From: Octopus bimaculoides
Lineage: Eukaryota
Length of the DNA: 57,454 bases
NCBI RefSeq assembly: GCF_001194135.2
Contig: NC_068993.1
Location: 27,396,637 to 27,454,090, forward strand
Direction of reading: 5' to 3'
Shown here: positions 2,874-56,831 of the stretch, piece after piece
Layout: every line of letters starts with the position of its first letter
How positions within the stretch are numbered: position 1 is the stretch's first letter
Program-made: the position numbers and the translations under genes
Notes under the pieces: model-generated
Databases searched by the model: none
Seen by the model: the letters and a program-made list of their open reading frames with translations, nothing else
What the model was told of the DNA's origin: nothing

Positions 2874-3732
2874 CTATGTCACAGAATTAAACATTTCTTT
2901 CAGTGTGTGAGCTGACTGCATGTCAATTAGTTCAAGTTTCACCTCCTCAGGTGCTGTATCAATATCAACAGCAAAAGGATAAGGTAGCAAATTTAAATCA
3001 GGCTCAATTTTCTTAAAATCCTGAAATCTTCTGGTGACCTCGTCCTCCAAACTCAGCAAATGATCCCTAATCTTGGAAGAAACACTTGTAGGCACTTTCT
3101 GTTTTCTTAATAAAGGGAAATTACAAAACTTGCCCTCACCTGCTTGCCTTGCAAATAGACCAAGTTTTGTTTTGAATGATCTCACATACCTAAACATTTC
3201 ATGTACAAACAACCCCTTTCCCTGCAATGTCACATTCAATTCATTTAATTTCTCAAACATATCAGCTGCAAACATTATCTCCTATCTCCACTCCTCACAT
3301 CCCATTTTGGTCACAAAATCACATGAAAGCCCCAAACCTGTAATTCCCAAACCTGATTTAGCATTTTGCCCAGGCTCAACAACTGAACACTGTTGTGGCA
3401 AATCACATCTCCATACTCTGTCTCCATATCCTCAAAGCAGAGATTTAAGTTGTTGACGGTAGAGTGCCCTTGCTCTGATTGTGTTCACTACGCTCACTAC
3501 AAGATTCTCTAAAAGTTTAAACATACCCAAATTTTTTTCCAGTAAATTCTCTGACCCCATTTGTTGTAATTCTTGCCATTCTATTCCATGACAAGGCACG
3601 TTTCTCCAGCTAATCCACAACACATTGAAACAAGTCCTGGTTGTATTTTTCATTGATTCCAAACCAAGCAGTTCCTCTGTGATGATGAAATTTTCATCAA
3701 CTCCGCAGACAAAGATAAGTAACTGTGCAGTG
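2874..3732 (-). pseudogene. Buster/SPIN-type transposase central part
   Basis: Resumes (DIA)QLLIFVCGVDENFIITEELLGLESMKNTT, then VVSVVNTIRARAL and FAADMFEKLNELNVTLQGKG..FKTKLGLF..FPLL..RFQDF, with frameshifts and stops. Confidence 0.85.
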
Positions 3733-6589
3733 CAGTGGCAGATCTACTATAAAACTAATGAAGCAACTTAATTTTTTCATTCTGTCAATTTTTTTTCATT
3801 TTTGTATTTTTCTGTGCAGATTGCTGTTACCAGTCTCAGTGGATGTCATCTCACTCCTACACAGAGTCTAGAAATGTAGTATCTAGCCATGAGCTGTTCC
3901 ACCTGCTGTTTCTGCCAACATGGAGTAGCATAAAAAATAAAAGTACAATAAAAAGTGCAGATAATTCGCTTTTCTTGAATTATTTTGGAAACTTCAGCCT
4001 TTGGAAGCATCATCAAATATGTCTACTACTACATTAGCATGGTAGATAAGAATTCTTATTTTCTCAGCAGGACATCACTATTTAATGACCAATGAAAGGG
4101 TTTGCCTCCTAATTCTGAACTTACCATCTGTTCAGTACAAAGCATTTTTTCTACTTTAAAAATTGCTTGAATATCACCTTGTACAAAATGAACAATTCTT
4201 AATTTATGACTATATATTAAGTTGTGGACCCTTTGAGCGGATACCAGAAACGCCAACTCAAGGAAAAGCAATCTAACAAAATTTCTAAATGTCAAAAACT
4301 ATCAAACTATTTTACAATGTCAAGTAAAAGTTTGTCATCACCTGCAACTGAAACAAGCCATGTAAGCACCAGTGAAGTCAATGATAGCATACAAACCATG
4401 AGTGTTCTGTATTGCAATAATCAACCTACTGTTGACACTTTTGGTGCAGATGATGATCACAGTGGTCAAGAACTTCAAGAAAAGAGAGAGCAGAAAAAGG
4501 AAACAAGAAGCAAATTTAGTGATTTCAAAGAATAGAGTGACCTGACAAACTGGCCCGTAACAATTGATAATAAGTTCATACAAAACTGTTTAATGCAAGG
4601 CATCNNNNNNNNNNNNNNNNNNNNNNNNNNNNNNNNNNNNNNNNNNNNNNNNNNNNNNNNNNNNNNNNNNNNNNNNNNNNNNNNNNNNNNNNNNNNNNNN
4701 NNNNNNNNNNNNNNNNNNNNNNNNNNNNNNNNNNNNNNNNNNNNNNNNNNNNNNNNNNNNNNNNNNNNNNNNNNNNNNNNNNNNNNNNNNNNNNNNNNNN
4801 NNNNNNNNNNNNNNNNNNNNNNNNNNNNNNNNNNNNNNNNNNNNNNNNNNNNNNNNNNNNNNNNNNNNNNNNNNNNNNNNNNNATGGAACATAACAGGGT
4901 GATGTTGAGCTGGCTAACGTGAGAGTCAATTAAAAAACACTGTGGATCAGCAACTTGAGGAACAGTTGAGAAAAAACATGCAATACTATTTTAAAGTACT
5001 AAAAAGAGTTGTAGCAGTTATAAAGTTTTTAAGTGAAAGAGGTTTAGCATTTAGAGGTCATAAGGAAAAGTGGGGCTCCCCAAACAATGGAAATTTCAGG
5101 GGGTGGGGCATTGGGCTTAATGCAGTGTTTGACCCATTTTTACATGAACATTTAGAGAAATGTTAAAAGGAAAAAGTAAATATAATTTATCTATCCAAAT
5201 TCATGTATGAAGAATTGATAGAAATCATGGGAAAACATGTGAAAGATGAAATGGTGAATCAGACCAACAACCTAGACATCAAATACTACTCAATTATTGT
5301 TGACTCTACACCTGACATGACACATGCTGACCAGCTGGTAATTGTGGTTCGATACTGTTATAATGGAAAGCCCTGTGAGAGATTTTTAGCATTTTTACCA
5401 ATAGAAAACCATTCATCCACGACCTTGTTCAACAAAATAACAGAATTTCTGGGGGAGCATAAGCTTTCACTTGAAAATATCCATGGTCAGTTGTACAATA
5501 ATGCTTCCAATATGAAGGGCTTGGAGAAAGGGCTGCAAGCACTTCTTAAAAACATTAACAGGTATGCAGACAATGTACCATGTGCAAGCCATTCACTCAA
5601 CCTTGTTGGAGAAAAGCAGTGTCTACTGTACCTGAAGTTGTNNNNNNNNNNNNNNNNNNNNNNNNNNNNNNNNNNNNNNNNNNNNNNNNNNNNNNNNNNN
5701 NNNNNNNNNNNNNNNNNNNNNNNNNNNNNNNNNNNNNNNNNNNNNNNNNNNNNNNNNNNNNNNNNNNNNNNNNNNNNNNNNNNNNNNNNNNNNNNNNNNN
5801 NNNNNNNNNNNNNNNNNNNNNNNNNNNNNNNNNNNNNNNNNNNNNNNNNNNNNNNNNNNNNNNNNNNNNNNNNNNNNNNNNNNNNNNNNNNNNNNNNNNN
5901 NNNNNNNNNNNNNNNNNNNNNNNNNNNNNNNNNNNNNNNNNNNNNNNNNNNNNNNNNNNNNNNNNNNNNNNNNNNNNNNNNNNNNNNNNNNNNNNNNNNN
6001 NNNNNNNNNNNNNNNNNNNNNNNNNNNNNNNNNNNNNNNNNNNNNNNNNNNNNNNNNNNNNNNNNNNNNNNNNNNNNNNNNNNNNNNNNNNNNNNNNNNN
6101 NNNNNNNNNNNNNNNNNNNNNNNNNNNNNNNNNNNNNNNNNNNNNNNNNNNNNNNNNNNNNNNNNNNNNNNNNNNNNNNNNNNNNNNNNNNNNNNNNNNN
6201 NNNNNNNNNNNNNNNNNNNNNNNNNNNNNNNNNNNNNNNNNNNNNNNNNNNNNNNNNNNNNNNNNNNNNNNNNNNNNNNNNNNNNNNNNNNNNNNNNNNN
6301 NNNNNNNNNNNNNNNNNNNNNNNNNNNNNNNNNNNNNNNNNNNNNNNNNNNNNNNNNNNNNNNNNNNNNNNNNNNNNNNNNNNNNNNNNNNNNNNNATGG
6401 AACAAGTGATAGGGCTTCTTTAAAAGGGTTGAAAAATTTAGGATAGAAGTTCTAAATCAAGTCTATGACTGCTTGATAATCCAGTTAAGCAAGAGGATGG
6501 AAGGTTCAAGTTTCTCTCAGAATTGATTAACAATTCAGAATTTATTTACATTATTTACATGGATATTTGTCCTCATCTTGTTTGTTGTT

Positions 6590-6766: not shown

Positions 6767-8511
6767 ATGGGCAATTATGGGCTTATAAATCTGATATTTT
6801 CCTATCCTTCCTTAATACTGGTTTCCATATGCTATTCATTTCTGCACTCGGTCTACTTAGGAGGTTGTTGTGTCCTAGCATATGTGCTGCTTCTTTTAGT
6901 TTTCAGATTTTCCAGTGGCGTTCTCTGTCTATAATTTTAACTTCATCCCACAGGGGGAGGTGGTCTCCATTTTTCCATACATGATCAGCTATACCCGATT
7001 TATCAATATCTCTACAGCTTTGCGATGTTCCTCTACCCTTATTTTGAGGGGGCGACATGTTTCGCCTTTGTATAACCTACCACAGCTGCATGGGATGGAG
7101 TACATGCAGTTTTTGGTCATATTCTCTTCTATTGGTGGTTTTACTTGAAGGAGATATTTGCAAAGTGTTGTATTACTCTTGAATACTGTCCTGATGTCAT
7201 ATGGGCCGCATATCTTTTGTATAGGGTAAACCGACTGTGGACAGTTTATTGGTTTCATCCTCTCTTTTCTTCATAAGTGGAATGGATAGTATGTTTTGGG
7301 GGTAGTAGTTGCTTAATAGATTGTTACTGAGCTTGATCATTTCTTCGTGGTGTGTATCATGATTACTACTTATATTCTTTGCTCGATATTTTAGGCACTA
7401 AGCAATCCCTCTCTTTACACTGTATGGATGGTGGGAATTGAAGTTCAGGTATCATCCAGTGAAGGTTGGCTTGTGGTATATGGCTGTCCTGAATCCATAC
7501 TTGGTGTATGTTAATAATACGTCCAAGAGCTGTTAGATTATGTGAACTCAATAAAGCCATCCATACAGTTCACAATGGAAAAGGAAAAAGACAATCAGCT
7601 AGCATTCCTGGATGTATTAATAACATGCACCAAATATACTTCTGTATACTGCAAGCCGACCTTCACTGGACGATACCTCAACTTCAATTCCCACCACCTC
7701 AGAACACAGAAGAAAACACACCATCTAAAATGCAATGCACAGAAGTTCTTCAGCTTATTTAAAAGCAACAATTAATTGAAGTGTTCCCTAATATTACTAC
7801 TGCACTTAATCTGTACTTGACAATGCCTATCATGAGCTGTGAAGCAGAAAGGAATTTCTCAAAGCTTTCCAAAGAATAAATTTTAGTCTACCATGACTGA
7901 AGAGCGCTTAAATTCCTTATGCATATTGTCTCTAGAAAATGACATTGCAAGGAAGTTCTCATATGATAAAACTGTAAGGGAATACGTTGCCATAAAAAAC
8001 AGAAAAAAGAGTATTTTGTAATTTGTATTTTCATATGTATCTTAAATATAAGATTAATATTAGATTATATTAACTGTGGTATTTGTTATGTTTTATGTCT
8101 TTATTCTCTGAAGTATCATGCATGCTTCCTTAATTTTCAAACCCTATAACTTTAAAAGTATAAGGCATAGCCTGGAAAATATTTGTTTACACCAGTGACT
8201 TTGAGAATCACAATCTGAAATATAATGCTTAAATTTGTAAAGAAAATTGTGGTGATCCGCCATGGAACAACTACATTGACAAAGATATTTGTGATTAACC
8301 ACCCTTTGTTTCTGGTGGAAAGAGGGCTCACTGTCAGACTCATTTTTAAGAACTCCACCATTTGGGCTATCAGCACCTCAAGGTTGGCGTTCCTGCAAGG
8401 GCATGAAAATTCTTTGACCTTTGTTGGATGTTCTCTTACTGTTGCTGGTTGTAATGGGGGACCCCATAGCATTTTAAACTTCGGGGCCCCAATGTTGTAA
8501 ATCTGCCACTG

Positions 8512-19595: not shown

Positions 19596-20770
19596 CAAGG
19601 TGCATTCCAGAAATTTTGAGACTTTTTTTTAAGGAAAGTCATTTATTTCTGCCCTAGGTTACTGTAATTTTAGTACATCATTACTAATAAGCTGACCTGC
19701 TAGCTTTTGTTTATTTCCGATTGAAGAAGATGGCTGTAACAGCACTTTGAACACAACACTGTTTATCACAGCTGAATGCAGTTGGGACATGAAGATGATT
19801 TGGAAGCTCACTATTCAATAAAGTTTTGTGTTAAATTGGGCAACAATGCTACAGAAATTTATGAAATGCTCCAGACTGCTTATGGATTAGCTTGTATGAG
19901 CTGAGCATCTGTTTTTTGCTGGCAAGAGGTTCAACAATGGGAAAAAGGAGGTGAGAAACAATGAGAGGTGTGAGAGGGAAAGGGATGTCAGAATATCAGA
20001 GATGGTTGAGAAAATTCAGTTTGTGTAGCAACAGTACACAGAATTATCAATGAAGATCTGAACTTGTGCGAAGTTTGTTCTCAGGATGCTCAGTGATGAA
20101 CAGAAGGAAAGACAAATTGGTGACTGCTGGGAGATGGTTGAGCTCATTACCTCCAATCCAAGAGTACTTGAGTCTCTGGTGACCTGTGTTGACCTGTTAT
20201 GATCCAGAGTGCCCAATGAAAGTATCCTGTCTCCCCCAAACTGCATCTCATCTAAGCTGACTCTCTCCCTAATTAGTTGGGCTATGACCTTCTCAGTGAC
20301 TTTCATTACCTGGTCCAACAACTTAATACCTCTGTAATTGTTTGTATCTAAAGCGTCACCTTTACCCTTGTAGCAGTTGACTATTGTGCTGCTACACCAG
20401 TCATTGGGTATGACTCCTTCGTGTATCACCTGATTAACTATACGGGTGACTAGGTTATAGCCAACACTGCCAGATATTTTGAGTATCTCTGCAGTGATTC
20501 CTGATGGGCCAGGGGCTTTCCCTGTCTTCATACTCTTGGTCGCTTTATCTACCAAGGTACTGTCAATTAGGATAGCTGGTTCCTCTGTTGGGTCGACATG
20601 CGGCAGACTCTCTTCCTCCCATTCATTCCCTTTATTAAGCAACCTTTCATAGTGGTATCTCCAAACCCCTCTCTTTGCAGCCTCATTTAGTGCAAGTGAG
20701 CCAAAATCCTGAGACAATAAAAAATTCTTGCATTCAAACCACTAGGCAAAACTATTAACACTAGGTTTGC
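19596..20770 (+). mobile_element. mariner-type DNA transposon relic, interrupted by an RTE fragment
   Basis: TA at 19594-19595 then TIR-like CAAGGTGCATTCCAGAAA. Transposase remnants SIKFCVKLGNNATEIYEMLQTAYG and CAKFVLRMLSDEQKERQ..LESLVTC..YDPE, apparently resuming at about 20692. Confidence 0.78.
20233..20692 (-). mobile_element. RTE-clade LINE fragment (RT N-terminal region)
   Basis: Open frame MKTGKAPGPSGITAEILK..IPNDWCSSTIVNCYKGKGDALDTNNYRGIKLLDQVMKVTEKVI..LDEMQFG. Confidence 0.85.
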
Positions 20771-23989: not shown

Positions 23990-24790
23990 AGTATGCAGCT
24001 AAAATTCTAGTTTGAACTGTGAAGTGGGTGGAATTCTTTAAGTATGATGTTGACTTTCCTGCTAATGGACTGATTATATCCACAAGGAAGCAGCTCAGTG
24101 GATGACATGCTGAACCTCGACAGTTTACAATAGGTTTTAATGGAATACCATCCTTGTGAATCTTAGGTAGACCATACATGTGTGGTAGTTTACTGTAGTG
24201 TTGAGTCAGTTGTCTGTACTTCATTAATATAAAGTGATCCTTGTTCTTGATCAAGATCTGTGACAACTTCCTCTCTGTTTTCAGAGTTGGGTCTTTCTTT
24301 ACTTTGCTGTAGCTACCATCACTTATAAGACTTGCCAGTTTTTCCGAGTAGTCAGACTAGTTCATCACCACTGTAGCATTTCCCTTGTCCACCAGAAGTA
24401 TTATGACGGATTTGTCACTCTGTAGTCATTTGATAGCAAACTTTTCTTCCTTAGTGATGTTTGGTTTGGGAAGTTTCGCTTCTTCCAGTACTTGTCTCAC
24501 TTTCCCCCTTAGTTCATCTTCCTGAGCTTTTGGTATCTTTACGGCTATCTTTTCAATAGGGGCTATTATATCCAAGTATGGAATGTGCTTGATGGTTGTC
24601 GCAAAGTTGAGACTTTTGAGTAGTATTGCTTCTTCAAAACTTTCTAGATATCAGCTACTTACATTAATTACTGCTTTCATGGGTGGGTGACGGACTTCAG
24701 TCTTCATTCTCTGACCTTTGAGTTTCATAAACTTCTTAATCTCGCGTGTCTTCACCATTTCAAATTCTTTCATGTGAAAGCAGTAAGCAC
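23990..24790 (-). mobile_element. PLE family A, RT N-terminal fragment
   Basis: LNFATTIKHIP..VDKGNATVVMN*SDYSEK..DPTLKTERK..LPHMYGLPKIHKDGIPLKPIV..GSACHPLS..YLKNSTHF, typical PLE RT N-terminus. Confidence 0.85.
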
Positions 24791-25449: not shown

Positions 25450-26750
25450 AAAATGGACTATATACCTGTTGTGATTTAGTTATCCATAGTCCGATGATAT
25501 TTCGAAATACAATTCCTTCTTCAGATATTCTTAGATGGAGTCGCTGATATAATCTGTTTTCCAACGGCTTTTCTTTTTTCGGAAGCGTCTCAGCAGTGGT
25601 CTCACGAAGCTCCTTCTGGAATTCCTCATGAGAAGTGCGTGGGGTCGGCTATGTCCCAATCTCGTGTGTGTTGGTACATTTGTAGCGCTGCTTCTAAGTT
25701 ATGTATTATATGTGCAGCTTCCTGTTTTTTCTCCCTTTTTTTCTCCCTCTTCTCTTTTTTTTTGTTATAAACAATAGATGAGCATATCAAAAATGAACCT
25801 ACATGCATCCAGATGTAGCTATATAATATATTGATTACCAACCCGTTGTTAATTTAGGGTCCTAGTCTGTGTGTGAGTATAGCTTCCTTAATTCTTAAAT
25901 TACCCAAATTTCTTTCATTGGCCTCAGTTATGACTGTTATGCTTTTGTCAGTGTTCCGGCATCTGTCTAGATGTTTTCTGAAGGAGAAGGCTCTCGTGTT
26001 CAGATGTTCTTTGATGCGGACGTGTAACAGTGTTGTTGTGCTACCCACATAGAACTTGTTGCATTTGTTACATTGTATTCAATACACAACATTTACCCGT
26101 TGGCATACATCTGTGTCACGGATGGGACAATTTGTTAGTGTGCATTGATTGTTGTCCCTTGTTCGTTTCTTTGCGAGGTGTTCTCTCAGAGAGGGGCCGG
26201 AGTGGGCTAGTTGTATGTTTAGCCCTTTTCTTATGGCTCTTCGGATGGCTGTAGTTATCCTCTCGCTAAAATGGGGTATTTTAAGGAAGCATGTGTTGCT
26301 GGGTTTTCTATGTATTCGGCGTGTTGGTCGTCTTGGGTACTTAAGCCGATTTACAATGGATCTAGGATGCCCGTTGGTTTTCAATATATTTAGGAAGCGT
26401 GTAGTGTGGGTTACCTTGTCCTTGGTTCTGATGCACTTGCCTTGGATGCGTGCAAGTTCATTTCTGGCATATCCTATTTTAGCACCGAGTGGAGGTGCTG
26501 AATTGTATTGGACAAACATATCTCTACTGGCTGCTTTTCTGTAGAACTTGTTGTGGATCTCCCCTTCTTCTGTTATATTCAGTTTGAAGTCAATTAATCA
26601 TAATGATCCAGTGATGTTGGGATGTTCTATAGTGAACTTTATGTTCATGTCCATGTTACTGAACGTCGTGAATATTCTCCCAGCCTCTTCACGGGAGGTT
26701 GTGAGTATGAGGATGTCATCTACGTACCTGGTGAAGAAGGCGCATGAGGG
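25450..26750 (-). mobile_element. PLE family B (Penelope/Poseidon-like), 5'-truncated RT plus GIY-YIG
   Basis: FTRYVDDILI (RT catalytic motif intact), IKFTIEHP, CPIRDTDVCQRVNVVY..CNKCNKFYVGSTTTLLHVRIKEH..LRIKEAI. Confidence 0.88.
25493..25527 (-). ncRNA. Minimal hammerhead ribozyme motif (PLE family B 3' end)
   Basis: CTGAAGA-A-GGAAT-tgt-ATTTC-GAAA-T-ATC-ATC. Core intact, stem II 5 bp with one G-U, palindromic ATAT stem III, stem I only 2 bp. Confidence 0.5.
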
Positions 26751-39440: not shown

Positions 39441-39760
39441 TGATTTTAATCACCTTACTTTCAAATTGTACGGATAATACCGTACTAAATTCTGGTGCCT
39501 AAACTTAAGTACGATATTCACCTGAATCTATATATATATATATATATATATAAATAATAGAAATATGTTACAAAAAGAAAATAGAAACTACATGTGGAAA
39601 TGTAAGGGTAAAGTAAGAAGAAAAATAAGTGAAAATGTACATTGGAAATATAAAAAAAACGTAAAGGCTTTTTATGAAAAGTAATGATAGATATATACAA
39701 TTGGATGAACTGAGGTAGGAATAAAAGTAATAAAAGTCATTATTGTAAATTGTTAAAGAG

Positions 39761-39808
39761 ATTCAAAAGCATACCGGTTTCGTAAAATTACTAACCATCG
39801 CTTTGAAT
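39761..39808 (-). ncRNA. Hammerhead ribozyme variant (A3/U8 core), 3' pLTR copy
   Basis: ATTCAAAGCG-ATGGTTA-GTA-attt-TAC-GAAA-CCGGTA-TGCTTTTGAAT. 10-bp stem I with one bulge, 3-bp stem II, palindromic ACCGGT stem III, GUA site. Confidence 0.65.
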
Positions 39809-41526
39809 GCACACCGATTATTGAACGGTGTCAGGTCAACTAGTCCCTTAGTAAAAAGATTATGTGTAAGGGAGGTAAGTAGTTCTGGGTGGGTTTGGTG
39901 CAATTAGGGTAGATATAGATCTGTAATGTGAATGGTGTATGGGATGTATGGGGGTTAGTGGTATTAATTGAAAGGTTAGTAGTGTTCTGTATTATGTTAT
40001 GTGTTCATATTGAGTTGTGGAAGATGTTTATTGATGAAAGTTGCCTCTTTATTCATTCTTTGTTGTACTGAGGTGTTCTGTGAACATTGATAGAAGGGGA
40101 AAATTAGGAAATTAGGATTGAGATTCCTAGCACACCTTTCTATGTGTTCACTGACCTGTATCTGTCTGTATTGTGGGTGACGGATTTGTTCTTTGTGGAG
40201 AGTGGTTCTTCGACGGAGTGATATTCCAGTTTGGCCAATATAATTATTACCACACCCTAAGCATGTAATGGCATAGATTAGATTTTCCGAGGCACAAGTT
40301 AAATTTGATTTAATCTTAAATATTTCACCTTGTTTAAAGTGGAACTCTGAACCTTCCAAACAGTGGGGGCATGTACCACAGTTAGGTCGACCACATTTTT
40401 TCACTTTTGTTTCTGTTGTTAACGGATATAGTCTTGCGCTGGTTAATATTTTTTTCAATGATTTAGGTTGCATTTTGCTTTTGATAATTTTGTGTGAGCC
40501 TAAAATTTTGTTCATTGTTTTATCTCCTGTGAGGATGGGCAGATTTTGGATGATAATGTTGAAGGCTTCGTTATTTCTAGGGTTATGTGTGGAGATGTAT
40601 GGGAGTATTTTTAAGTCTGGTTTAGTATTTCGGTTAACTTCCCTTAATCTTCGTATATCTGTTTACTTAGCTCGTTTAATGCTATCATTTATTAATGACA
40701 TTGGGTAATGTCTTTTGATTAGTTCTGAGTTCAAGGAGTCTTCGTTCACGAGTATAGGTGTACGAAACTATGGTACACATTCTTTTCACTAGATTATAAG
40801 TTATATTAATGTTTATGTGTTTGGGGTGGCATGAGTTGAATAATAGGTATTGTTTAGAATCTGTGGGTTTATAGAAGATGTCTGTTTCGATGTGGTTATT
40901 GACTATTTTAATTAGGATGTCAAGAAAGGGAGTTGTATACTCCTGTGTTCCATGGTGAATTGTATGTTGCTATTAATATTGTTAAGCATTATTTTGAAAT
41001 CGAGGAGTTTGTCGCTGCTGTCTTTCCAAAGTATAAAGCAATCGTCCAAATACCTCTTCCAAGTTCTCCTTTAAATATCAATGAAATGAGGTGCCATATT
41101 TTTGTAGTGATGATTGATATATTTTAAGCTCTAGGAAACCCATTACAAGGTTCGCAATCACTGGAGCAGCTTGGGTTCCCATTGAAATTCCACATTTTTG
41201 TCGATAGTAAACTGTATCGAACATGAAATAGTTGTTCAGTAGGATGAATTTGAGTGCTGCGATTATGAATCTGTGGTTGATGCGTCCTGGGGTCTCTTCT
41301 GGGTATTTTTCTAACCAGAAGGTGATCGCTTGTATACTATAATCATGTGGGATACTAACCTTTCAATTAATACCACTGACCCCACCCCCATACATCCCAC
41401 ACACCATTCACATTACAGATCTATATCTACCCTAATTGCACCAAATCCAGAACTACTTACCTCCCTTACACATAATCTTTTTACTAAGGGACTAGTAGAC
41501 CTGACACCGTTCAGTAATCGGTGTGC

Positions 41527-41574
41527 ATTCAAAACAATGATTAATAATTTTACGAAACCGGTATGCTTTTGAAT
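41527..41574 (+). ncRNA. Hammerhead ribozyme variant (A3/U8 core), inverted pLTR copy
   Basis: ATTCAAAACA-ATGATTA-ATA-attt-TAC-GAAA-CCGGTA-TGCTTTTGAAT; predicted cleavage after A41563. Confidence 0.65.
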
Positions 41575-41613
41575 CTCTTTAACAATTCACAATAATGACT
41601 TCTNNNNNNNNNN

Positions 41614-41697
<84 letters not shown>

Positions 41698-41700
41698 TAT
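41614..41700. repeat. Compound (TA)(GA)n(TG)n microsatellite
   Basis: Direct reading. Confidence 0.95.
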
Positions 41701-42125
41701 ATGTATATGCCACCGAGTAAGATCACTTCCTAAACTCAGTAACTCCGTGTTCTATGAGTCCAAGAATTTCCTGTGTAGGAATGTAGTTGGAGTGGGTAAA
41801 GAGTTTTACAGCACTGAACAAACTTTTCAGCGTAATCAGCAATAAAACCAGTGGCACAACAGAGGTTGGGACGACCAAAAACTAACTTCACTTCAGGTTT
41901 TTTCTATGCGAATTTACCTGCTCCTGGAAGGTAGTTCTAAACGAGAACTAGGTGCCCTTCACTCCCAGTAGTTCACATGCTAGTTAACCCATAGCTGAGG
42001 TCCTAAAATGTCAGAGTAGATCTGAGAACAATAGTGACAAAGGGGTGGTTCTACACTCCTCAAAGCCTTTGAGCACCCATACCAGGGCCCCACTGCCGGA
42101 TGCACTTTGCAGTAATACATAAGTC

Positions 42126-42126
42126 A

Positions 42127-42182
<56 letters not shown>

Positions 42183-42749: not shown

Positions 42750-42843
<94 letters not shown>

Positions 42844-44877: not shown

Positions 44878-45909
44878 CAGCAGCAGCAGCAGCAACAACA
44901 ACAGTTTAATTTTTATTGTTTCTTACCAGCACATGTATCTATATGTTCACTGACTCCTTTTTGTTTGTATTCCGTTATTTTATTTTGTGATCTAGGCACT
45001 CATGCGTTGTCTTAAGTGTATTCCCATTTGTCCTATGTGTTCCTCTCTATATTATGGACATGTAATTGCTTAGATTAGGTTTTTAGATTCACAGATGAAG
45101 TTAGTTTTTATTGTGGAGAATTATTCATGTTTAAAACAAATCTCCTACACTACAGGTGGATCTTCCACATTTTTTTACAGTTGATATTTTCAGCGACGTT
45201 TCGTTACGTAGATTCTTCGAGCTTAATGTTTGGCGTTCTTACGGCAAATATTATTTGGTACTAATATGCCTATAAGCACGACATATAACCATTTATTAAG
45301 AATATCCAATTATTTTAAAGTTAGGAAGTTTGCGCACAAACTCTTTCCAACTCATAATTCTGCAACGTCATTAGTTGAGTAACTATGGGTTTTGAAATAT
45401 AAAAATCATCGATTTTAAACTCGAATAGACTATTTAAAATTCATTGGGTAATATCGAATGTACATATGTGAAGTCCTAGAAAACTTATTAGCTGATGAAA
45501 TTTTATTACACTAAAAGCAATGAGCTATTAATTTATAGTAACCATAAAGTTTTGAAGACCTTTAAGTATTACAAAGCTAGAAATCAGTATAACGTATTAT
45601 GTTTTACCTAATACTCGATAAATCGAAAACTATAATGCTGTATATGTGATAAACCAACGCAATAATATAGAATATAATAGATTTTCGTTTGGTGTATTGT
45701 CTCCCAAAGATGTTATAAAACAATGATTTGTTTATATGATTGTATAAATAATTTTTATGGCTTTAAGCCCTTAATCTTAACTCAGTTTTAGTATACAGAG
45801 CCAGCTAAATATGTATTTCCGCTTGATGTGTGCGGGACTATTTATTCGGACGTATCTCTATGTGTATGTATGTATGTATGTATGTATTTATGCATGCATG
45901 CATGCATGT

Positions 45910-54048: not shown

Positions 54049-56831
54049 CAGGGTTGCCAATTTAGCACATTTTATGCTAGATCTAGCATTTTTTTTTCAG
54101 CATTTAGCAGAAAATTTTTGAATCTAGCATTTAGCAGGGAAAATAGCACGTTTAAAATTTTATTTAGCAGTTTTTTAGCATTTTTCTCTGATCATGACTT
54201 TTCCACAATGGCTACCCTTTTTTCTTCTTTTTCCTCCTTTTCTACTTTTGTTAATGTATCTTATAGCCAAATTTTAGTACTATCGGCTATTGTTGAATTT
54301 TTCTTTCACTTCCTTGAAACTTCAAATGAAAGTTTATGAAAAGGAAGTTTATCAAGTTATGAACTTTTCCACACACCCCCACCCCGGCTTGGATACAGAG
54401 TGGTGCTGGTGGGGGGATGGGGAGAAGAGATAACTCATGTCAGCGCCTGAACTCACTACACAATTATGTAAATATGTTGCAAAGAATGTAAGCATGGAAA
54501 TTCGTCCTAACAATGCTTTATTCCGTAGTGATAATGGCCGAAAACCAATCTAAGTTATATCAGAACACAATTTTAAGATTTCTTTTCCATTTATAAGTTG
54601 GCCACCCTGCATCCTGATTCAGTATTCTTCACCTCAAGAATTTGTAAGCAGCAAACATAAGAATTGTTAATGACGAATGAAAGAATTGTTAGGGGCAAAC
54701 TGATAAGTTGTGTTTTCAATTTTATATTTTTAGTAATCATTCAATTTATTTTCTTGCTTCCCACTACATTAAAATGAGCAAAGAAAAAACAAAGTTGTAC
54801 TAGCAAAAATTCCGAAAGGAATGGCTTAAGATGCCAGCATTTACTAAGTGGTTGTGTGAAGTACCTAGTGACCAATCTAAAGTACATTGCAGATATTGTA
54901 GATGTAATATGTTGGCAAAATATTCCCTTTTAGTAAGCCACTGTAAAGCAAAACAAAAACAAAAACAAACAAAAAAAAACATAAGGCATCAACTCCACAG
55001 CATCTGATTCCTCTTACCAATTTTATTAAGACTAAAAATGATAAGACATCTATGCTTGAAGTAAATTTAGTAATGTTTATTTGTTGCCACTCATCATTTA
55101 ATAGCTGTGATCACTTAATAGAATTATGTAAGAATTATATGTCTCATAGTGATATTATATCCAAAGTGAAGTTGCACAAAATGTGCAAATATTGTGAGAA
55201 ATGTTCTAGCTCCATATTTTGATGGAGGTTTGATTTCTGATATTGGAGATAGAAAATTTAGCCTGTTATTAAATGAATCCAATGATATATCGATAAACAT
55301 GTTGTTAGGAAACATGTTGTTATATATTATAGTGACACTCACAAAAAAGTGGTACATACATGTCTCAGTATGGTATACTTAGAAACATGTGATGCAGATG
55401 GCATTGTAGATGTCTTAAAAATTGAATTAGTGAAAAAGAAATTAGATATAAAACATTTACTGGCTATAGGAACCAACAATGCTAGAGTAATGATAGGCGT
55501 CAACAATGGTGTTTTCTAGAAATTTAAAGAATGCATGCCCATAAATTTAGAATTTTTAGTATCCGAAACCTATAAATGGTTCTCTCATTCTTCAACAAGA
55601 CAAAGTGCCTTGCTATCAATGATAAAGAGCCTTTGAAGATCATGAATTCTTGTACAACTAGGTGGCTGTCAATAGAACCAGCGGTAAATAGAATTTTAAG
55701 CCAATGGTTTGAATTGAAAACTCGCTTCCAAACTACAACTACAAAAGAAAAATGCTTTACAGCACAAACGTTACATGAAATGTTTTGTGATTCTAGGAAT
55801 GAATTTTACATTTTATTTTTGCATCCAATTTCAAAATATGTTCAGGAAGTGAATAAACTGTTTGAATCCAACACTGTCGACAAAACAAAATTACTTGAAG
55901 ATCTTTCAAATTTGATCAAATCTGTTGCTAACATGTAGAATTGATCCTCTTGATACGGATGCTTCTATTGAGAAATTTCTGGATCCTAAAGCAAATTTAG
56001 GCTACAGGTTCGAGAGAAAGATAGCAGAAATGATTATCAAGAAGACTGTAACAGCCATCGAAGAAAATGATATTCGCAAAAGAGCACAACAATTTTTACT
56101 CTGCTTTTATAAAGAGCTCAAGCACCGTTTGCCAGGAGAAATTAATATACTGAGGAATATCAAATGTTTTTCAGTAGAGAATATTTTGCAGCATTTCAAA
56201 GAGCCAATTTTACCTGTCTTAGAAGCAATGCATTTAAATGAAGAAAAAAATGCTTCAATTGAAATTCAGTTTAATAGCATTCATTTAGTTAAATGGACAA
56301 ATACGTCTATTACTGAGGCATTCTGGCTGGAAGTCTTGGAATATAAAGATACTACTGGAGGAAATCCTTTTAGAGATGTTGCAAATTTTGCCATTAATCT
56401 ATTGACATTGGCAAATTCAAATGCAGAAGTTGAATGGTTGTTCAGTAGTATGGGTGTAATTTAATCAAAATTGGAAAGCAAAATGCATCTTCCTATGCTC
56501 AGACCAATATTATCTATAAAATATGGCCTGAAAAGATGTGGCAAATATTGCAAAAACTTCGATATTCCAAAACACATAATTAACAAGATTGGGACCTTGA
56601 ATGTATACAGAAGTCAAGACCTAGGCACTGCAGCTGAAAGTGATCAAATCAGTGAAATTCAAGAAATTATTTCTCAATGCTGAATATAATTAAAGAAAGT
56701 AAATAAAAATTAAGCTTTTGATATAATTAGTCTTTAGCATTTTTTTGTCATATTTAGCATTTTTTAGCATTTATTTGGTATTCTTTCTACTGAAATTAGC
56801 ATAAAATTCTGATTTTAAGTTGGCAACACTG
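54049..56831 (+). mobile_element. hAT DNA transposon (BED-finger, ZNF862-like transposase relic) inserted in the Gypsy LTR
   Basis: TIRs CAGGGTTGCCAA (54049-54060) / TTGGCAACACTG (56820-56831), 11 of 12 identical. Perfect 8-bp TSD TTTTCTTC (54041-54048, 56832-56839). Clustered TTAGCA subterminal motifs at both ends. Confidence 0.92.
54775..56683 (+). pseudogene. hAT transposase pseudogene
   Basis: QKFRKEWL..KWLCEVPSDQSKVHCRYCRC..H..KH; FSLLLNESNDIS; AIGTNNARVMIG; CTTRWLS; FWLEVLEYKD..GNPF..NSNAEVEWLFS. The CxxH region appears deleted. Confidence 0.85.

What the first reader, a model, noticed from the sequence alone, without database searches (positions are those of the whole stretch)
39735..41603. 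Hammerhead ribozyme with a compensatory A3-U8 core pair in both pLTRs of a Neptune/Naiad-like element
Seen: both pLTR copies (39761-39808 minus, 41527-41574 plus) have every structural part of a minimal type I hammerhead: a long stem I (ATTCAAA..CA / TGCTTTTGAAT), stem II GTA-attt-TAC, GAAA, palindromic stem III ACCGGT and a GUA site. The 7-nt core reads ATGATTA / ATGGTTA instead of CTGANGA. Established: C3 and G8 form a Watson-Crick pair in the active hammerhead core, and compensatory swaps partly rescue cleavage. Inference: because C3>A and G8>U are shared by both copies and complement each other, the A3-U8 pair was already in the template that made this insertion and may be the family's working ribozyme. 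CTGANGA-based searches would miss it. The two copies also differ by four A/G changes within 11 nt of the core, against about 6 substitutions in the rest of the pLTR. I cannot say whether this variant is already catalogued.
Basis: partly seen in the sequence, partly recalled or inferred. Interest (0 to 1): 0.82.

Follow-up and report, generated by a model that had tools for sequence, protein, structure and literature searches.

The report
Hammerhead ribozyme relics, A3-U8 core
A dead Penelope-like retrotransposon in an octopus genome carries two relics of a small self-cleaving RNA whose key core base pair is A-U instead of the usual C-G, and five related transposon families share that swap, so it is an inherited variant that standard ribozyme searches do not see.

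Summary
Window 39734-41603 is a 5'-truncated, frameshifted Penelope-like element (PLE) on the minus strand. [quoted passage not shown] Its 3' UTR/pLTR is repeated upstream in inverted orientation (about 250 nt, 10 substitutions in 244 aligned nt).

Each arm carries a minimal type I hammerhead: stem I, stem II, GAAA, palindromic ACCGGU and a GUA site. The cores read AUGGUUA (left arm) and AUGAUUA (right arm).

A3/U8 is not private to this locus. Five other PLE families (44-72% protein identity to one another, at least four samples) have AUGAAUA at the same place. One of them is a head-to-tail array of three 98%-identical copies with long ORFs. In the same subclade one element has C3-G8 and another U3-A8, and 23 more distant relatives have C3-G8. 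Positions 3 and 8 pair in 30 of 30 aligned ribozymes.

The two copies here are probably dead. The left has A6G, the right has a weakened stem II, and they lie on opposite strands.

Natural U3-A8 is published, including in PLEs. I found no report of natural A3-U8. Cleavage is untested. The element is Neptune/Nematis-type, not Naiad. The host is an octopus.

The parts
39734..39981 (-). 3' UTR / pLTR arm contiguous with the ORF (left arm)
   Evidence: Inverted repeat with 41353-41601. It continues directly from the EN stop codon at 39997-39999.
39761..39808 (-). Hammerhead relic L: stem I / core AUGGUUA (39798-39792; A3, G6, U8) / stem II GUA-AUUU-UAC / GAAA / ACCGGU / A17 (39772) / stem I
   Evidence: R2 model 21.5 bits. 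G6 replaces the invariant A6, and the predicted fold is diverted to an alternative pairing.
39997..41352 (-). 5'-truncated, frameshifted PLE ORF: RT from about motif 3/4 (YLDD present), CX4CxxC linker (CGRPNCGTC), CCHH, GIY-YIG. The last intact ORF is 39997-40515.
   Evidence: Three-frame translation. Pfam RVT_1 (20.4 bits, below the 29.6-bit curated cut-off) and GIY-YIG (23.8 bits, cut-off 22.6). tblastn to P0005 residues 300-751. 279 homologues, best 63% identity.
41353..41603 (+). Inverted upstream arm: a second 5'-truncated copy that consists of the 3' UTR/pLTR only
   Evidence: It joins the truncated RT at about 41352. Its outer end abuts the 10-N assembly gap.
41527..41574 (+). Hammerhead relic R: stem I / core AUGAUUA (41537-41543; A3, A6, U8) / stem II AUA-AUUU-UAC (A10.1.C11.1 mismatch) / GAAA / ACCGGU / A17 (41563) / stem I
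   Evidence: R2 model 22.0 bits. Stem II is not predicted to form.
41604..41613 (.). 10-N assembly gap that hides the element's right-hand boundary and any target-site duplication

Best explanation
The locus is a dead head-to-head pair of 5'-truncated copies of a canonical (C-terminal GIY-YIG, Neptune/Nematis-type) Penelope-like retrotransposon in an octopus genome. One copy is about 1.87 kb (RT remnant, EN and 3' UTR). The other is only the last 250 nt or so.

Each 3' UTR (pLTR) carries a minimal type I hammerhead of the kind found in PLE pLTRs. It has no stable helix III, only the palindrome ACCGGU. Two copies on tandem-element transcripts would therefore pair through it to build two active sites and cut after GUA. 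This mechanism is inferred from published PLE min-hammerheads and from the predicted dimer folds.

In this PLE subclade the core pair C3-G8 is replaced by A3-U8. That is an inherited, selectively maintained covariation, not decay. The pair geometry is kept and the 2'-OH of nucleotide 8 remains available as general acid, so the A3-U8 form is most likely the working ribozyme of these families. This step is inferred and not assayed.

The two copies in the window are relics. The left copy has A6G. The right copy has a two-base-pair stem II. They are on opposite strands, so they cannot dimerise in one transcript.
For: Shown:
- Element anatomy.
- A3/U8 in both arms.
- AUGAAUA with GAAACCGGU, stems I and II, at the homologous position in L003, L075, L077, L090 x3 and L091.
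- These families are 44-72% identical in protein to each other and 44-51% to the window ORF.
- L090 is a head-to-tail array of copies 97.6-98.5% identical, with 737-754-aa ORFs.
- Outside the ribozyme block the 3' UTRs are hardly alignable.
- Pair 3-8 is CG 23 / AU 5 / UA 2 with 0 unpaired.
- Stems I, II and III covary: 81% of cells paired against 52% when shuffled and 32-45% when slid; covariation score 0.67 against 0.17.
- In NJ trees all A-U lineages fall in one subclade, which also holds L002 (C-G) and L085 (U-A). The window groups with those two at 95-100/100 bootstrap.
- The R2 model, built without the window, ranks the two copies first and second.
- Predicted homodimers form the intermolecular ACCGGU helix III with swapped stems I.

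Literature:
- C3-G8 is a Watson-Crick pair of the active core, and ribozymes with covarying nucleotides at 3 and 8 are active in vitro (PMC3884650; PMC3088659 citing Przybilski & Hammann 2007).
- In a PLE hammerhead, C3G or G8C abolishes cleavage and the double mutant partly restores it (PMC11167929).
- Natural U3-A8 occurs in PLE min-hammerheads, which work as dimers (PMC4209133).
Against: - No cleavage assay exists for any A3-U8 natural hammerhead that I could find.
- PLE min-hammerheads cleave poorly in vitro even with C3-G8 (PMC4209133). The Anolis PLE ribozyme needs its protein, and its cleavage is dispensable for insertion in vitro (PMC11167929).
- I could not collect other copies of this exact family (best protein relative 63%), so the family consensus is inferred from two arms and from sister families.
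- The window's ribozyme differs from the AUGAAUA group in N7, stem II and stem I. Its closest typed relatives are C-G and U-A, so its A-U could be an independent origin or a pLTR exchange.
- Support for the whole subclade is moderate (39-72/100).
- Three typed lineages were left out of the 30 because they do not fit the standard register: L050 (C3.A8), L076 (C-AUGAAGA) and L079-83 (C-UUGAUGA).
- The sequences were picked with an anchor on GAAA plus a palindrome, and the structure was written by me.
Confidence: 0.8

Rival explanations
1. The motif keeps a hammerhead-like fold, including the 3-8 pair, but is conserved for a role other than self-cleavage. Possible roles are a recognition or assembly structure for the PLE RT/EN ribonucleoprotein, or a transcript-end or promoter-proximal element. 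On this reading A3-U8 is tolerated because only the shape matters.
For: - PLE min-hammerheads have low in vitro activity (PMC4209133).
- In the Anolis PLE the ribozyme cleaves only with protein present, catalytic mutants do not affect insertion, and no RNA-seq ends map to the cut site (PMC11167929).
- Naiad PLEs thrive without canonical hammerheads (PMC8557442).
- Elements with odd cores (L079-83, one protein identical on 5 contigs; L076) appear intact.
Against: - All catalytic nucleotides that do not pair (U4, G5, A6, A9, G12-A14, H17) are invariant in the 30 relatives. A purely structural role would not require that.
- The palindromic helix III needed for dimeric catalysis is kept throughout.
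Confidence: 0.15
2. A3 and U8 are chance mutations of a decayed canonical CUGAUGA hammerhead, private to this insertion or its immediate source.
For: - The element is old and broken: frameshifts, stops and 4% arm divergence.
- Both copies carry other damaging changes (A6G; A10.1).
- Rfam finds nothing.
Against: - Both arms share A3 and U8.
- The same two changes, still complementary, occur in five other families, including a young tandem array.
- No non-pairing 3/8 combination occurs among the 30 aligned ribozymes.
Confidence: 0.03
3. About the A/G cluster only: the four G(left)/A(right) differences are one event, A-to-I hyperediting of the RNA that templated the ORF-linked arm, fixed as A-to-G by reverse transcription.
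For: - Four same-direction transitions lie within 11 nt, against 6 mixed substitutions in the other 233 nt. P is about 0.03 for the clustering and about 1e-4 with same type and direction, both post hoc.
- A6 is invariant in relatives, so the left arm is derived there.
- Two of the As would face C in stems I and II.
- The host is an octopus, a lineage known for heavy ADAR activity (my knowledge).
Against: - G2.3-C1.3 and G10.1-C11.1 in the left arm look like the better, hence possibly ancestral, ribozyme.
- The 5' neighbours (A, C, G, A) show no clear ADAR preference.
- The stems are short for ADAR.
- There are only four sites and no outgroup of the same family.
Confidence: 0.25

Closest known systems
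Minimal hammerhead ribozymes of Penelope-like elements (Cervera & de la Pena 2014, PMC4209133; Lunse, Weinberg & Breaker 2017, not readable here)
   Same: - Type I topology.
- Located in the pLTR just 3' of the RT-EN ORF.
- No stable helix III, but a palindrome (here ACCGGU) that allows dimers.
- Short stems I and II with much covariation.
- Copies occur in tandem or on opposite strands next to truncated PLEs.
   Different: - Core reads AUGANUA, not CUGANGA.
- In the AUGAAUA group stem II opens with U10.1.U11.1 instead of the usual extra nucleotide plus G10.1-C11.1. The window's own copy has G/A10.1-C11.1.
Natural U3-A8 hammerheads (Perreault et al. 2011, PMC3088659; Schistosoma Cercyon PLE, about 1,300 hits, PMC4209133)
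   Same: The C3-G8 core pair is replaced by another Watson-Crick pair, in one case in PLE pLTRs. U3-A8 also occurs among the relatives collected here (L085, L038).
   Different: U3-A8 keeps pyrimidine-3/purine-8 and is reachable by two transitions through a U.G wobble. A3-U8 puts the purine at 3 and needs two transversions. I found no published natural example, though not all literature was searchable.
Engineered 3-8 swaps (Martick & Scott 2006; Przybilski & Hammann 2007; Nelson & Uhlenbeck 2008; PAc PLE C3G/G8C, PMC11167929)
   Same: These show that the pair, not the identity of its bases, is what catalysis needs. Single mismatches kill cleavage and double swaps rescue it.
   Different: They are laboratory mutants. 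From my recollection of Przybilski & Hammann 2007 (paper not held), every Watson-Crick pair cleaved in an Arabidopsis ribozyme, while the PLMVd ribozyme preferred Y3-R8. An R3-Y8 natural lineage is therefore not a foregone conclusion.
Neptune / Nematis clades of canonical EN+ PLEs (Arkhipova 2006; Craig et al. 2021, PMC8557442)
   Same: - RT followed by a CX2-5CxxC linker and a CCHH GIY-YIG domain at the C-terminus.
- pLTRs with a hammerhead.
- An inverted 5'-truncated upstream copy.
- Microsatellite-rich insertion neighbourhood.
   Different: Placement against named Neptune or Nematis reference sequences was not done. Naiad (N-terminal EN, no canonical hammerhead) is excluded.

Membership tests
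Hammerhead ribozyme (type I, minimal PLE form) | Three helices around a junction, with stem I closed by the flanks (type I) | tested here: met
   Stem I has 10 pairs with one bulge. Stem II has 3 bp (left) or 2 bp (right). Helix III is A15.1-U16.1 plus the CCGG palindrome. The helices covary across 30 relatives.
Hammerhead ribozyme (type I, minimal PLE form) | Invariant unpaired core nucleotides U4 G5 A6 ... A9, G12 A13 A14, A15.1-U16.1, H17 | tested here: inconclusive
   The right copy has all of them (AUGAUUA ... GAAA ... GUA). The left copy has G at position 6. All are invariant in the relatives.
Hammerhead ribozyme (type I, minimal PLE form) | Consensus C3 and G8 | tested here: not met
   A3 and U8 in both copies. 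The pair is retained as Watson-Crick. Across relatives the counts are CG 23, AU 5, UA 2.
Hammerhead ribozyme (type I, minimal PLE form) | Site-specific self-cleavage 3' of H17 | not testable with these tools
   Needs in vitro transcription and cleavage of dimeric constructs.
Hammerhead ribozyme (type I, minimal PLE form) | Palindromic helix III/loop that allows an active dimer | tested here: met
   ACCGGU in both copies. Predicted homodimers of the relatives and of a repaired window sequence form the intermolecular helix III.
Rfam hammerhead families (RF00163, RF00008 and others) | Score at or above the gathering threshold | tested here: not met
   No hammerhead hit even at E<=10. Canonical C3-G8 relatives also fail, so this says little.
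Canonical EN+ Penelope-like element, Neptune/Nematis type | RT followed by a C-terminal GIY-YIG endonuclease | tested here: met
   Pfam GIY-YIG passes its curated cut-off. RVT_1 matches below its cut-off (20.4 against 29.6 bits). The order along the minus strand is shown. Full-length relatives show the same order.
Canonical EN+ Penelope-like element, Neptune/Nematis type | CX2-5CxxC Zn-finger-like linker before the EN domain, and a CCHH motif | tested here: met
   CGRPNCGTC and CLGC...H...H in ORF 39997-40515. The criterion comes from PMC8557442.
Canonical EN+ Penelope-like element, Neptune/Nematis type | pLTRs, often with an inverted 5'-truncated upstream copy | tested here: met
   Inverted arms of about 250 nt.
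Canonical EN+ Penelope-like element, Neptune/Nematis type | Phylogenetic placement with named Neptune or Nematis references | not tested
   No reference set (Repbase) is available in the tools.
Naiad/Chlamys PLEs | N-terminal GIY-YIG, CxC linker, no canonical hammerhead | tested here: not met
   The EN domain is C-terminal and a hammerhead is present.

The most novel reading that the evidence does not exclude
A whole subclade of molluscan or marine-invertebrate Penelope-like elements, octopus included, runs on a catalytically active hammerhead with a purine-3/pyrimidine-8 (A3-U8) core pair. In this subclade the 3-8 pair has switched between A-U, U-A and C-G while staying Watson-Crick. If so, many natural ribozymes have been invisible to CUGANGA descriptors, and the subclade is a natural experiment on how an 'invariant' active-site pair can be exchanged by two transversions.
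Probability: 0.55. Interest if true: 0.6.

Novelty: new variant of a known kind. Interest (0 to 1): 0.55.

Why it matters
Hammerhead searches in genomes usually fix CUGANGA. U3-A8 was added after 2011-2014. An A3-U8 lineage means that descriptor-based censuses of PLE ribozymes undercount, at least in cephalopods and their relatives.

It is also natural evidence, beyond laboratory double mutants, that the 3-8 interaction is a plain Watson-Crick pair whose orientation can be reversed. That bears on models in which nucleotide 8 acts through its 2'-OH rather than its base.

For this window itself the consequence is modest. The two copies are relics of a dead insertion.

Tried and rejected
- Rfam at gathering and at E<=10 gave no hammerhead hit. 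Rfam also misses the canonical relatives, so I dropped it as a test of the variant.
- My first strict descriptor (stem II >=3 bp, A6 fixed) missed the window's own copies and most relatives. I replaced it with an anchor on GAAA plus a palindrome.
- No other copy of the pLTR exists in the window.
- A viral contigs pattern scan for the AUGAAUA group found nothing. A viral contigs protein scan found nothing. Genome contigs gave only 4 distant loci.
- Contigs L001, L084 and L078 have flanks too short or microsatellite-filled, so no ribozyme could be typed.
- The R2 hit at 6808-6847 (ATGAATA...GAAACCAGT, 14.9 bits, E 1.2) lies inside the EN coding region of another PLE relic and I judged it chance.
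- The R1 hit at 45484-45535 (CTGATGA) lacks GAAA and has no inverted partner. I judged it chance.
- I checked whether C3->A creates the start codon of a real ORF. Only 7-26-codon uORFs follow (by eye, on sequences), so I rejected the idea.
- Lunse et al. 2017 (PMC5785218) and Przybilski & Hammann 2007 (PMC1986816) are not held. Cervera 2014 has no supplements held.
- Literature searches for 'A3-U8' and 'G8U/C3A' found nothing relevant.
Full report
WHAT IS AT THE LOCUS

Window 39734-41603 is bounded by inverted arms of about 250 nt, at 39734-39981 and 41353-41601/3. They are 92.5% identical counting two indels of 5 and 4 nt. There are 10 substitutions in 244 aligned positions.

Between the arms, the minus strand carries the 3' part of a Penelope-like element (PLE) ORF, broken by frameshifts and stops. 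It holds:
- an RT from about motif 3/4 (…YRQKCGISMGTQAAP…, YLDD);
- a thumb/linker region;
- a CX4CxxC motif (CGRPNCGTC);
- a CCHH GIY-YIG domain (…NLIYAITCLGCGNNYIGQTG…), whose last intact ORF is 39997-40515.

Pfam finds GIY-YIG above its curated cut-off and RVT_1 below its cut-off.

The left arm runs on directly from the stop codon, so it is this copy's 3' UTR (its pLTR). The right arm is the same 250 nt in the opposite orientation, joined to the truncated RT at about 41352. The structure is therefore two 5'-truncated copies placed head to head. [quoted passage not shown]

A 10-N gap at 41604-41613 hides the right-hand boundary. A C-terminal endonuclease with a CX2-5CxxC linker marks the Neptune/Nematis type. 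Naiads have the endonuclease at the N-terminus and lack canonical hammerheads, so 'Naiad-like' does not apply.

A hAT-like ORF elsewhere in the window (55925-56464) has 82-86% identical relatives only in Octopus vulgaris and O. bimaculoides. The window is therefore octopod DNA.

THE RIBOZYME-LIKE MOTIF

Both arms read: stem I (AUUCAAA[G/A]C[G/A]) – AUG[G/A]UUA – [G/A]UA-AUUU-UAC – GAAA – CCGGU – A – UGCUUUUGAAU.
- a 10-pair stem I with one bulged U;
- a short stem II;
- G12-A14;
- A15.1…U16.1 around the palindrome CCGG;
- a GUA cleavage triplet.

Position 3 is A and position 8 is U in both arms.

The four differences between the arms in this stretch are all G in the left arm and A in the right. 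They fall at positions 2.3, 2.1, 6 and 10.1. Two of them matter for function. G6 in the left copy replaces a nucleotide that is invariant in every relative. A10.1 in the right copy leaves stem II with two pairs, and the stem is no longer predicted to form. The two copies are also on opposite strands, so one transcript cannot contain both in sense. Both are best read as relics.

IS A3-U8 PRIVATE TO THIS LOCUS?

I therefore used the ORF. A stitched 444-aa translation finds 279 relatives. The best is 63% identical, and the named ones come from molluscs (Argonauta, Mytilus, Saccostrea). I fetched the contigs of the closest relatives and 75 more loci from metagenome and genome collections. In each I looked 130-290 nt after the EN stop for GAAA followed by a palindrome.

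Five further PLE families have an A3-U8 core, always AUGAAUA:

| Locus | Stem I 5' | Core | Stem II | GAAA + helix III | H17 | Stem I 3' |
|---|---|---|---|---|---|---|
| L003 | ttctcc | AUGAAUA | u-ca(c)…(u)ug-u | GAAACCGGU | U | ggaaaa |
| L075 | tcc | AUGAAUA | u-ccc-cgaaa-ggg-u | GAAACCGGU | A | gga |
| L077 | acc | AUGAAUA | u-ccc-uguaa-ggg-u | GAAACCGGU | U | ggu |
| L091 | uuaaucu | AUGAAUA | u-ccc-cgcaa-ggg-u | GAAACCGGU | U | agauuaa |
| L090 | uucc | AUGAAUA | u-cugu-guaaa-acag-u | GAAACCGGU | A | ggaa |

L090 is a 13.7-kb contig with three head-to-tail copies 97.6-98.5% identical. It has 737-754-aa ORFs, and the ribozyme follows each copy.

These families come from at least four different samples. 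They are 44-72% identical to each other in protein and 44-51% identical to the window's ORF. Outside the ribozyme block their 3' UTRs barely align.

In the same subclade:
- L002 has the canonical core: cgcuaa CUGACGA … GAAACCGGU U uuagcg.
- L085 has U3-A8: aagaaau UUGAAAA gc-uacac-gc GAAACCGGU A auuucuu.
- The proteins of L002 and L085 are 75% identical.

Twenty-two more distant relatives have C3-G8 and one (L038) has U3-A8.

On a 30-sequence alignment that excludes the window, the 3-8 pair is CG 23, AU 5, UA 2, with none unpaired. For the whole structure:
- 81% of cells are paired, against 52% when shuffled and 32-45% when the partner is slid.
- The covariation score is 0.67 against 0.17, reached by 0 of 500 shuffles.

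Two cautions apply. I chose the sequences with an anchor and wrote the structure myself. I also left out three lineages that do not fit the register:
- L050: C3.A8.
- L076: ccac-C-AUGAAGA.
- L079-83: aaacuc-C-UUGAUGA with a 7-nt 'stem II'.

PHYLOGENY

NJ trees were built on a query-anchored tblastn alignment. All A-U lineages fall in one subclade, together with L002, L085, L076, L079 and three untyped contigs. Bootstrap support for that subclade is 39-72/100 depending on columns and membership.

The window groups with L001, L084, L002 and L085 at 95-100/100. The A-U state therefore sits along the base of the subclade, and the C-G and U-A elements are nested next to the window.

The simplest reading is one switch to A-U at the base, followed by a later change in the L002/L085 lineage. 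Independent origins or an exchange of pLTRs are not excluded, because the window's ribozyme differs from the AUGAAUA group in N7 and in both stems. On any of these readings, A3-U8 is old and has been kept across roughly 50% protein divergence.

DETECTION

- A covariance model built only from C3-G8 relatives aligns the window copies in register (A under C3, U under G8). It scores them at only 14.7 and 13.7 bits, E about 0.3-0.5.
- A model built from all relatives, with the window excluded, gives 22.0 and 21.5 bits, E about 0.05-0.07 with rough calibration. These are the two best hits in the window, and the next is at 14.9 bits.
- Rfam finds no hammerhead here, but it also finds none in the canonical relatives.

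MECHANISM

Shown here:
- the anatomy of the element and of the motif;
- conservation of all unpaired core nucleotides;
- covariation of the three helices and of pair 3-8;
- the palindromic ACCGGU.

Inferred:
- Like other PLE min-hammerheads (PMC4209133), two copies on a transcript of tandem elements pair through ACCGGU. This builds an extended helix III and two active sites, which cut after H17. Predicted homodimers of L090, L091, L075, L003, L085, L029 and a repaired window sequence adopt exactly this arrangement.
- The A3-U8 pair replaces C3-G8 without loss of the fold. This rests on published work. C3-G8 is a Watson-Crick pair in the active structure and was confirmed by swap experiments (PMC3884650). 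Ribozymes with covarying nucleotides at 3 and 8 are active in vitro (PMC3088659). In a PLE ribozyme, C3G or G8C kills cleavage and the double mutant partly restores it (PMC11167929).

The same last paper is the main reason for caution. That ribozyme cleaved only with the PLE protein present, and cleavage was not needed for insertion in vitro. A non-cleaving structural role therefore remains a live rival.

WHAT IS KNOWN

Hammerheads in PLE pLTRs are well described. Natural covariation of the core pair to U3-A8 was reported in 2011 (PMC3088659). In 2014 it was reported specifically in Schistosoma Cercyon PLEs, with about 1,300 hits (PMC4209133). The U10.1.U11.1 opening of stem II seen here is also known.

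I found no report of a natural A3-U8 hammerhead. There are 0 papers with 'A3-U8' and hammerhead, and nothing on octopus PLE hammerheads. Lunse et al. 2017 and the 2014 supplements could not be read.

I therefore rate the finding a new variant of a known kind. The purine-3/pyrimidine-8 orientation needs two transversions. By my recollection of Przybilski & Hammann 2007, at least one natural ribozyme context disfavours it.

THE A/G CLUSTER

Four same-direction differences within 11 nt, against six elsewhere, is unlikely by chance. P is about 0.03 for the clustering and about 1e-4 if type and direction are also required, both post hoc.

Because A6 is invariant in relatives, the left arm is derived at that site. 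If one event made all four changes, it was A-to-G on the sense strand of the left arm's template. ADAR-type hyperediting before reverse transcription would do this, and it is plausible in an octopus.

Against this, the G's at 2.3 and 10.1 make better stems, which suggests changes in both arms. Only the family consensus can decide.

VERDICT

The locus itself is a dead relic. The interest lies in the clade-level A3-U8 core.

Noticed in passing
window 55925-56464 (+); also 5203-5640 (+), 2874-3275 (-): hAT-like transposase ORFs. The 179-aa ORF at 55925-56464 has 82-86% identical relatives only in Octopus vulgaris and O. bimaculoides, which places the window in an octopus genome.
   Followed up: partly
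window 24021-24494 (-), 25848-26123 (-), 44919-45196 (-), 7203-7529 (-) with 7521-7736 (+): Further decayed PLE fragments of other families (tblastn 25-50% identity). The pair around 7530 is another head-to-head inverted RT arrangement. A non-LTR RT fragment lies at 20016-20717 (-).
   Followed up: partly
window 39778-39808 (-) versus 41527-41557 (+): Four G(left)/A(right) differences within 11 nt at ribozyme positions 2.3, 2.1, 6 and 10.1. They could be ADAR-like hyperediting of one template RNA or independent transitions. This cannot be resolved without the family consensus.
   Followed up: partly
L079-L083 (about 2590-2640 in L079): One PLE protein (P0009) is identical on five contigs, including two TARA ocean samples. 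Its ribozyme reads aaacuc-C-UUGAUGA-uaauaau-GAAACCGGU-U-gaguuu. That means an extra nucleotide in the core or a U3.G8 wobble, with almost no stem II. L076 similarly reads ccac-C-AUGAAGA.
   Followed up: no
L090 1-8479: Head-to-tail array of three PLE copies (spacing 3.87-3.93 kb, 97.6-98.5% identity) with upstream ORFs and 737-754-aa RT-EN ORFs. Each copy is followed by an intact A3-U8 ribozyme, and the third has a C-to-A change at position 2.1.
   Followed up: partly
L003, L004, L006, L010, L022, L027, L075, L077, L079, L090, L091: 20-120 nt upstream of the ribozyme: Clusters of TGACGT(C/T)A (CRE-like) motifs in the pLTRs of many relatives, possibly promoter elements. They are not evident in the window's pLTR, which instead has a short hairpin ACACCG-N9-CGGTGT just 5' of stem I.
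   Followed up: no
window 6808-6847 (-): ATGAATAGC…GAAACCAGTA scores 14.9 bits with the R2 model (E 1.2). It lies inside the EN coding region (…AEMNSIWKPV…) of another PLE relic and is probably chance.
   Followed up: yes
window 39525-39552, 41614-41700, 42118-42180, 42750-42840: The element sits among microsatellites: (TA)n, (GA)n, (GT)n, (CTAT)n. This is consistent with the microsatellite insertion bias reported for PLEs with the CX2-5CxxC linker. The target-site duplication cannot be read because of the gap.
   Followed up: no
core positions 3-5 in all A3-U8 ribozymes (e.g. window 41537-41539): C3-to-A turns core nucleotides 3-5 into an AUG. Only 7-26-codon reading frames follow it, so it does not start the main ORF.
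   Followed up: yes
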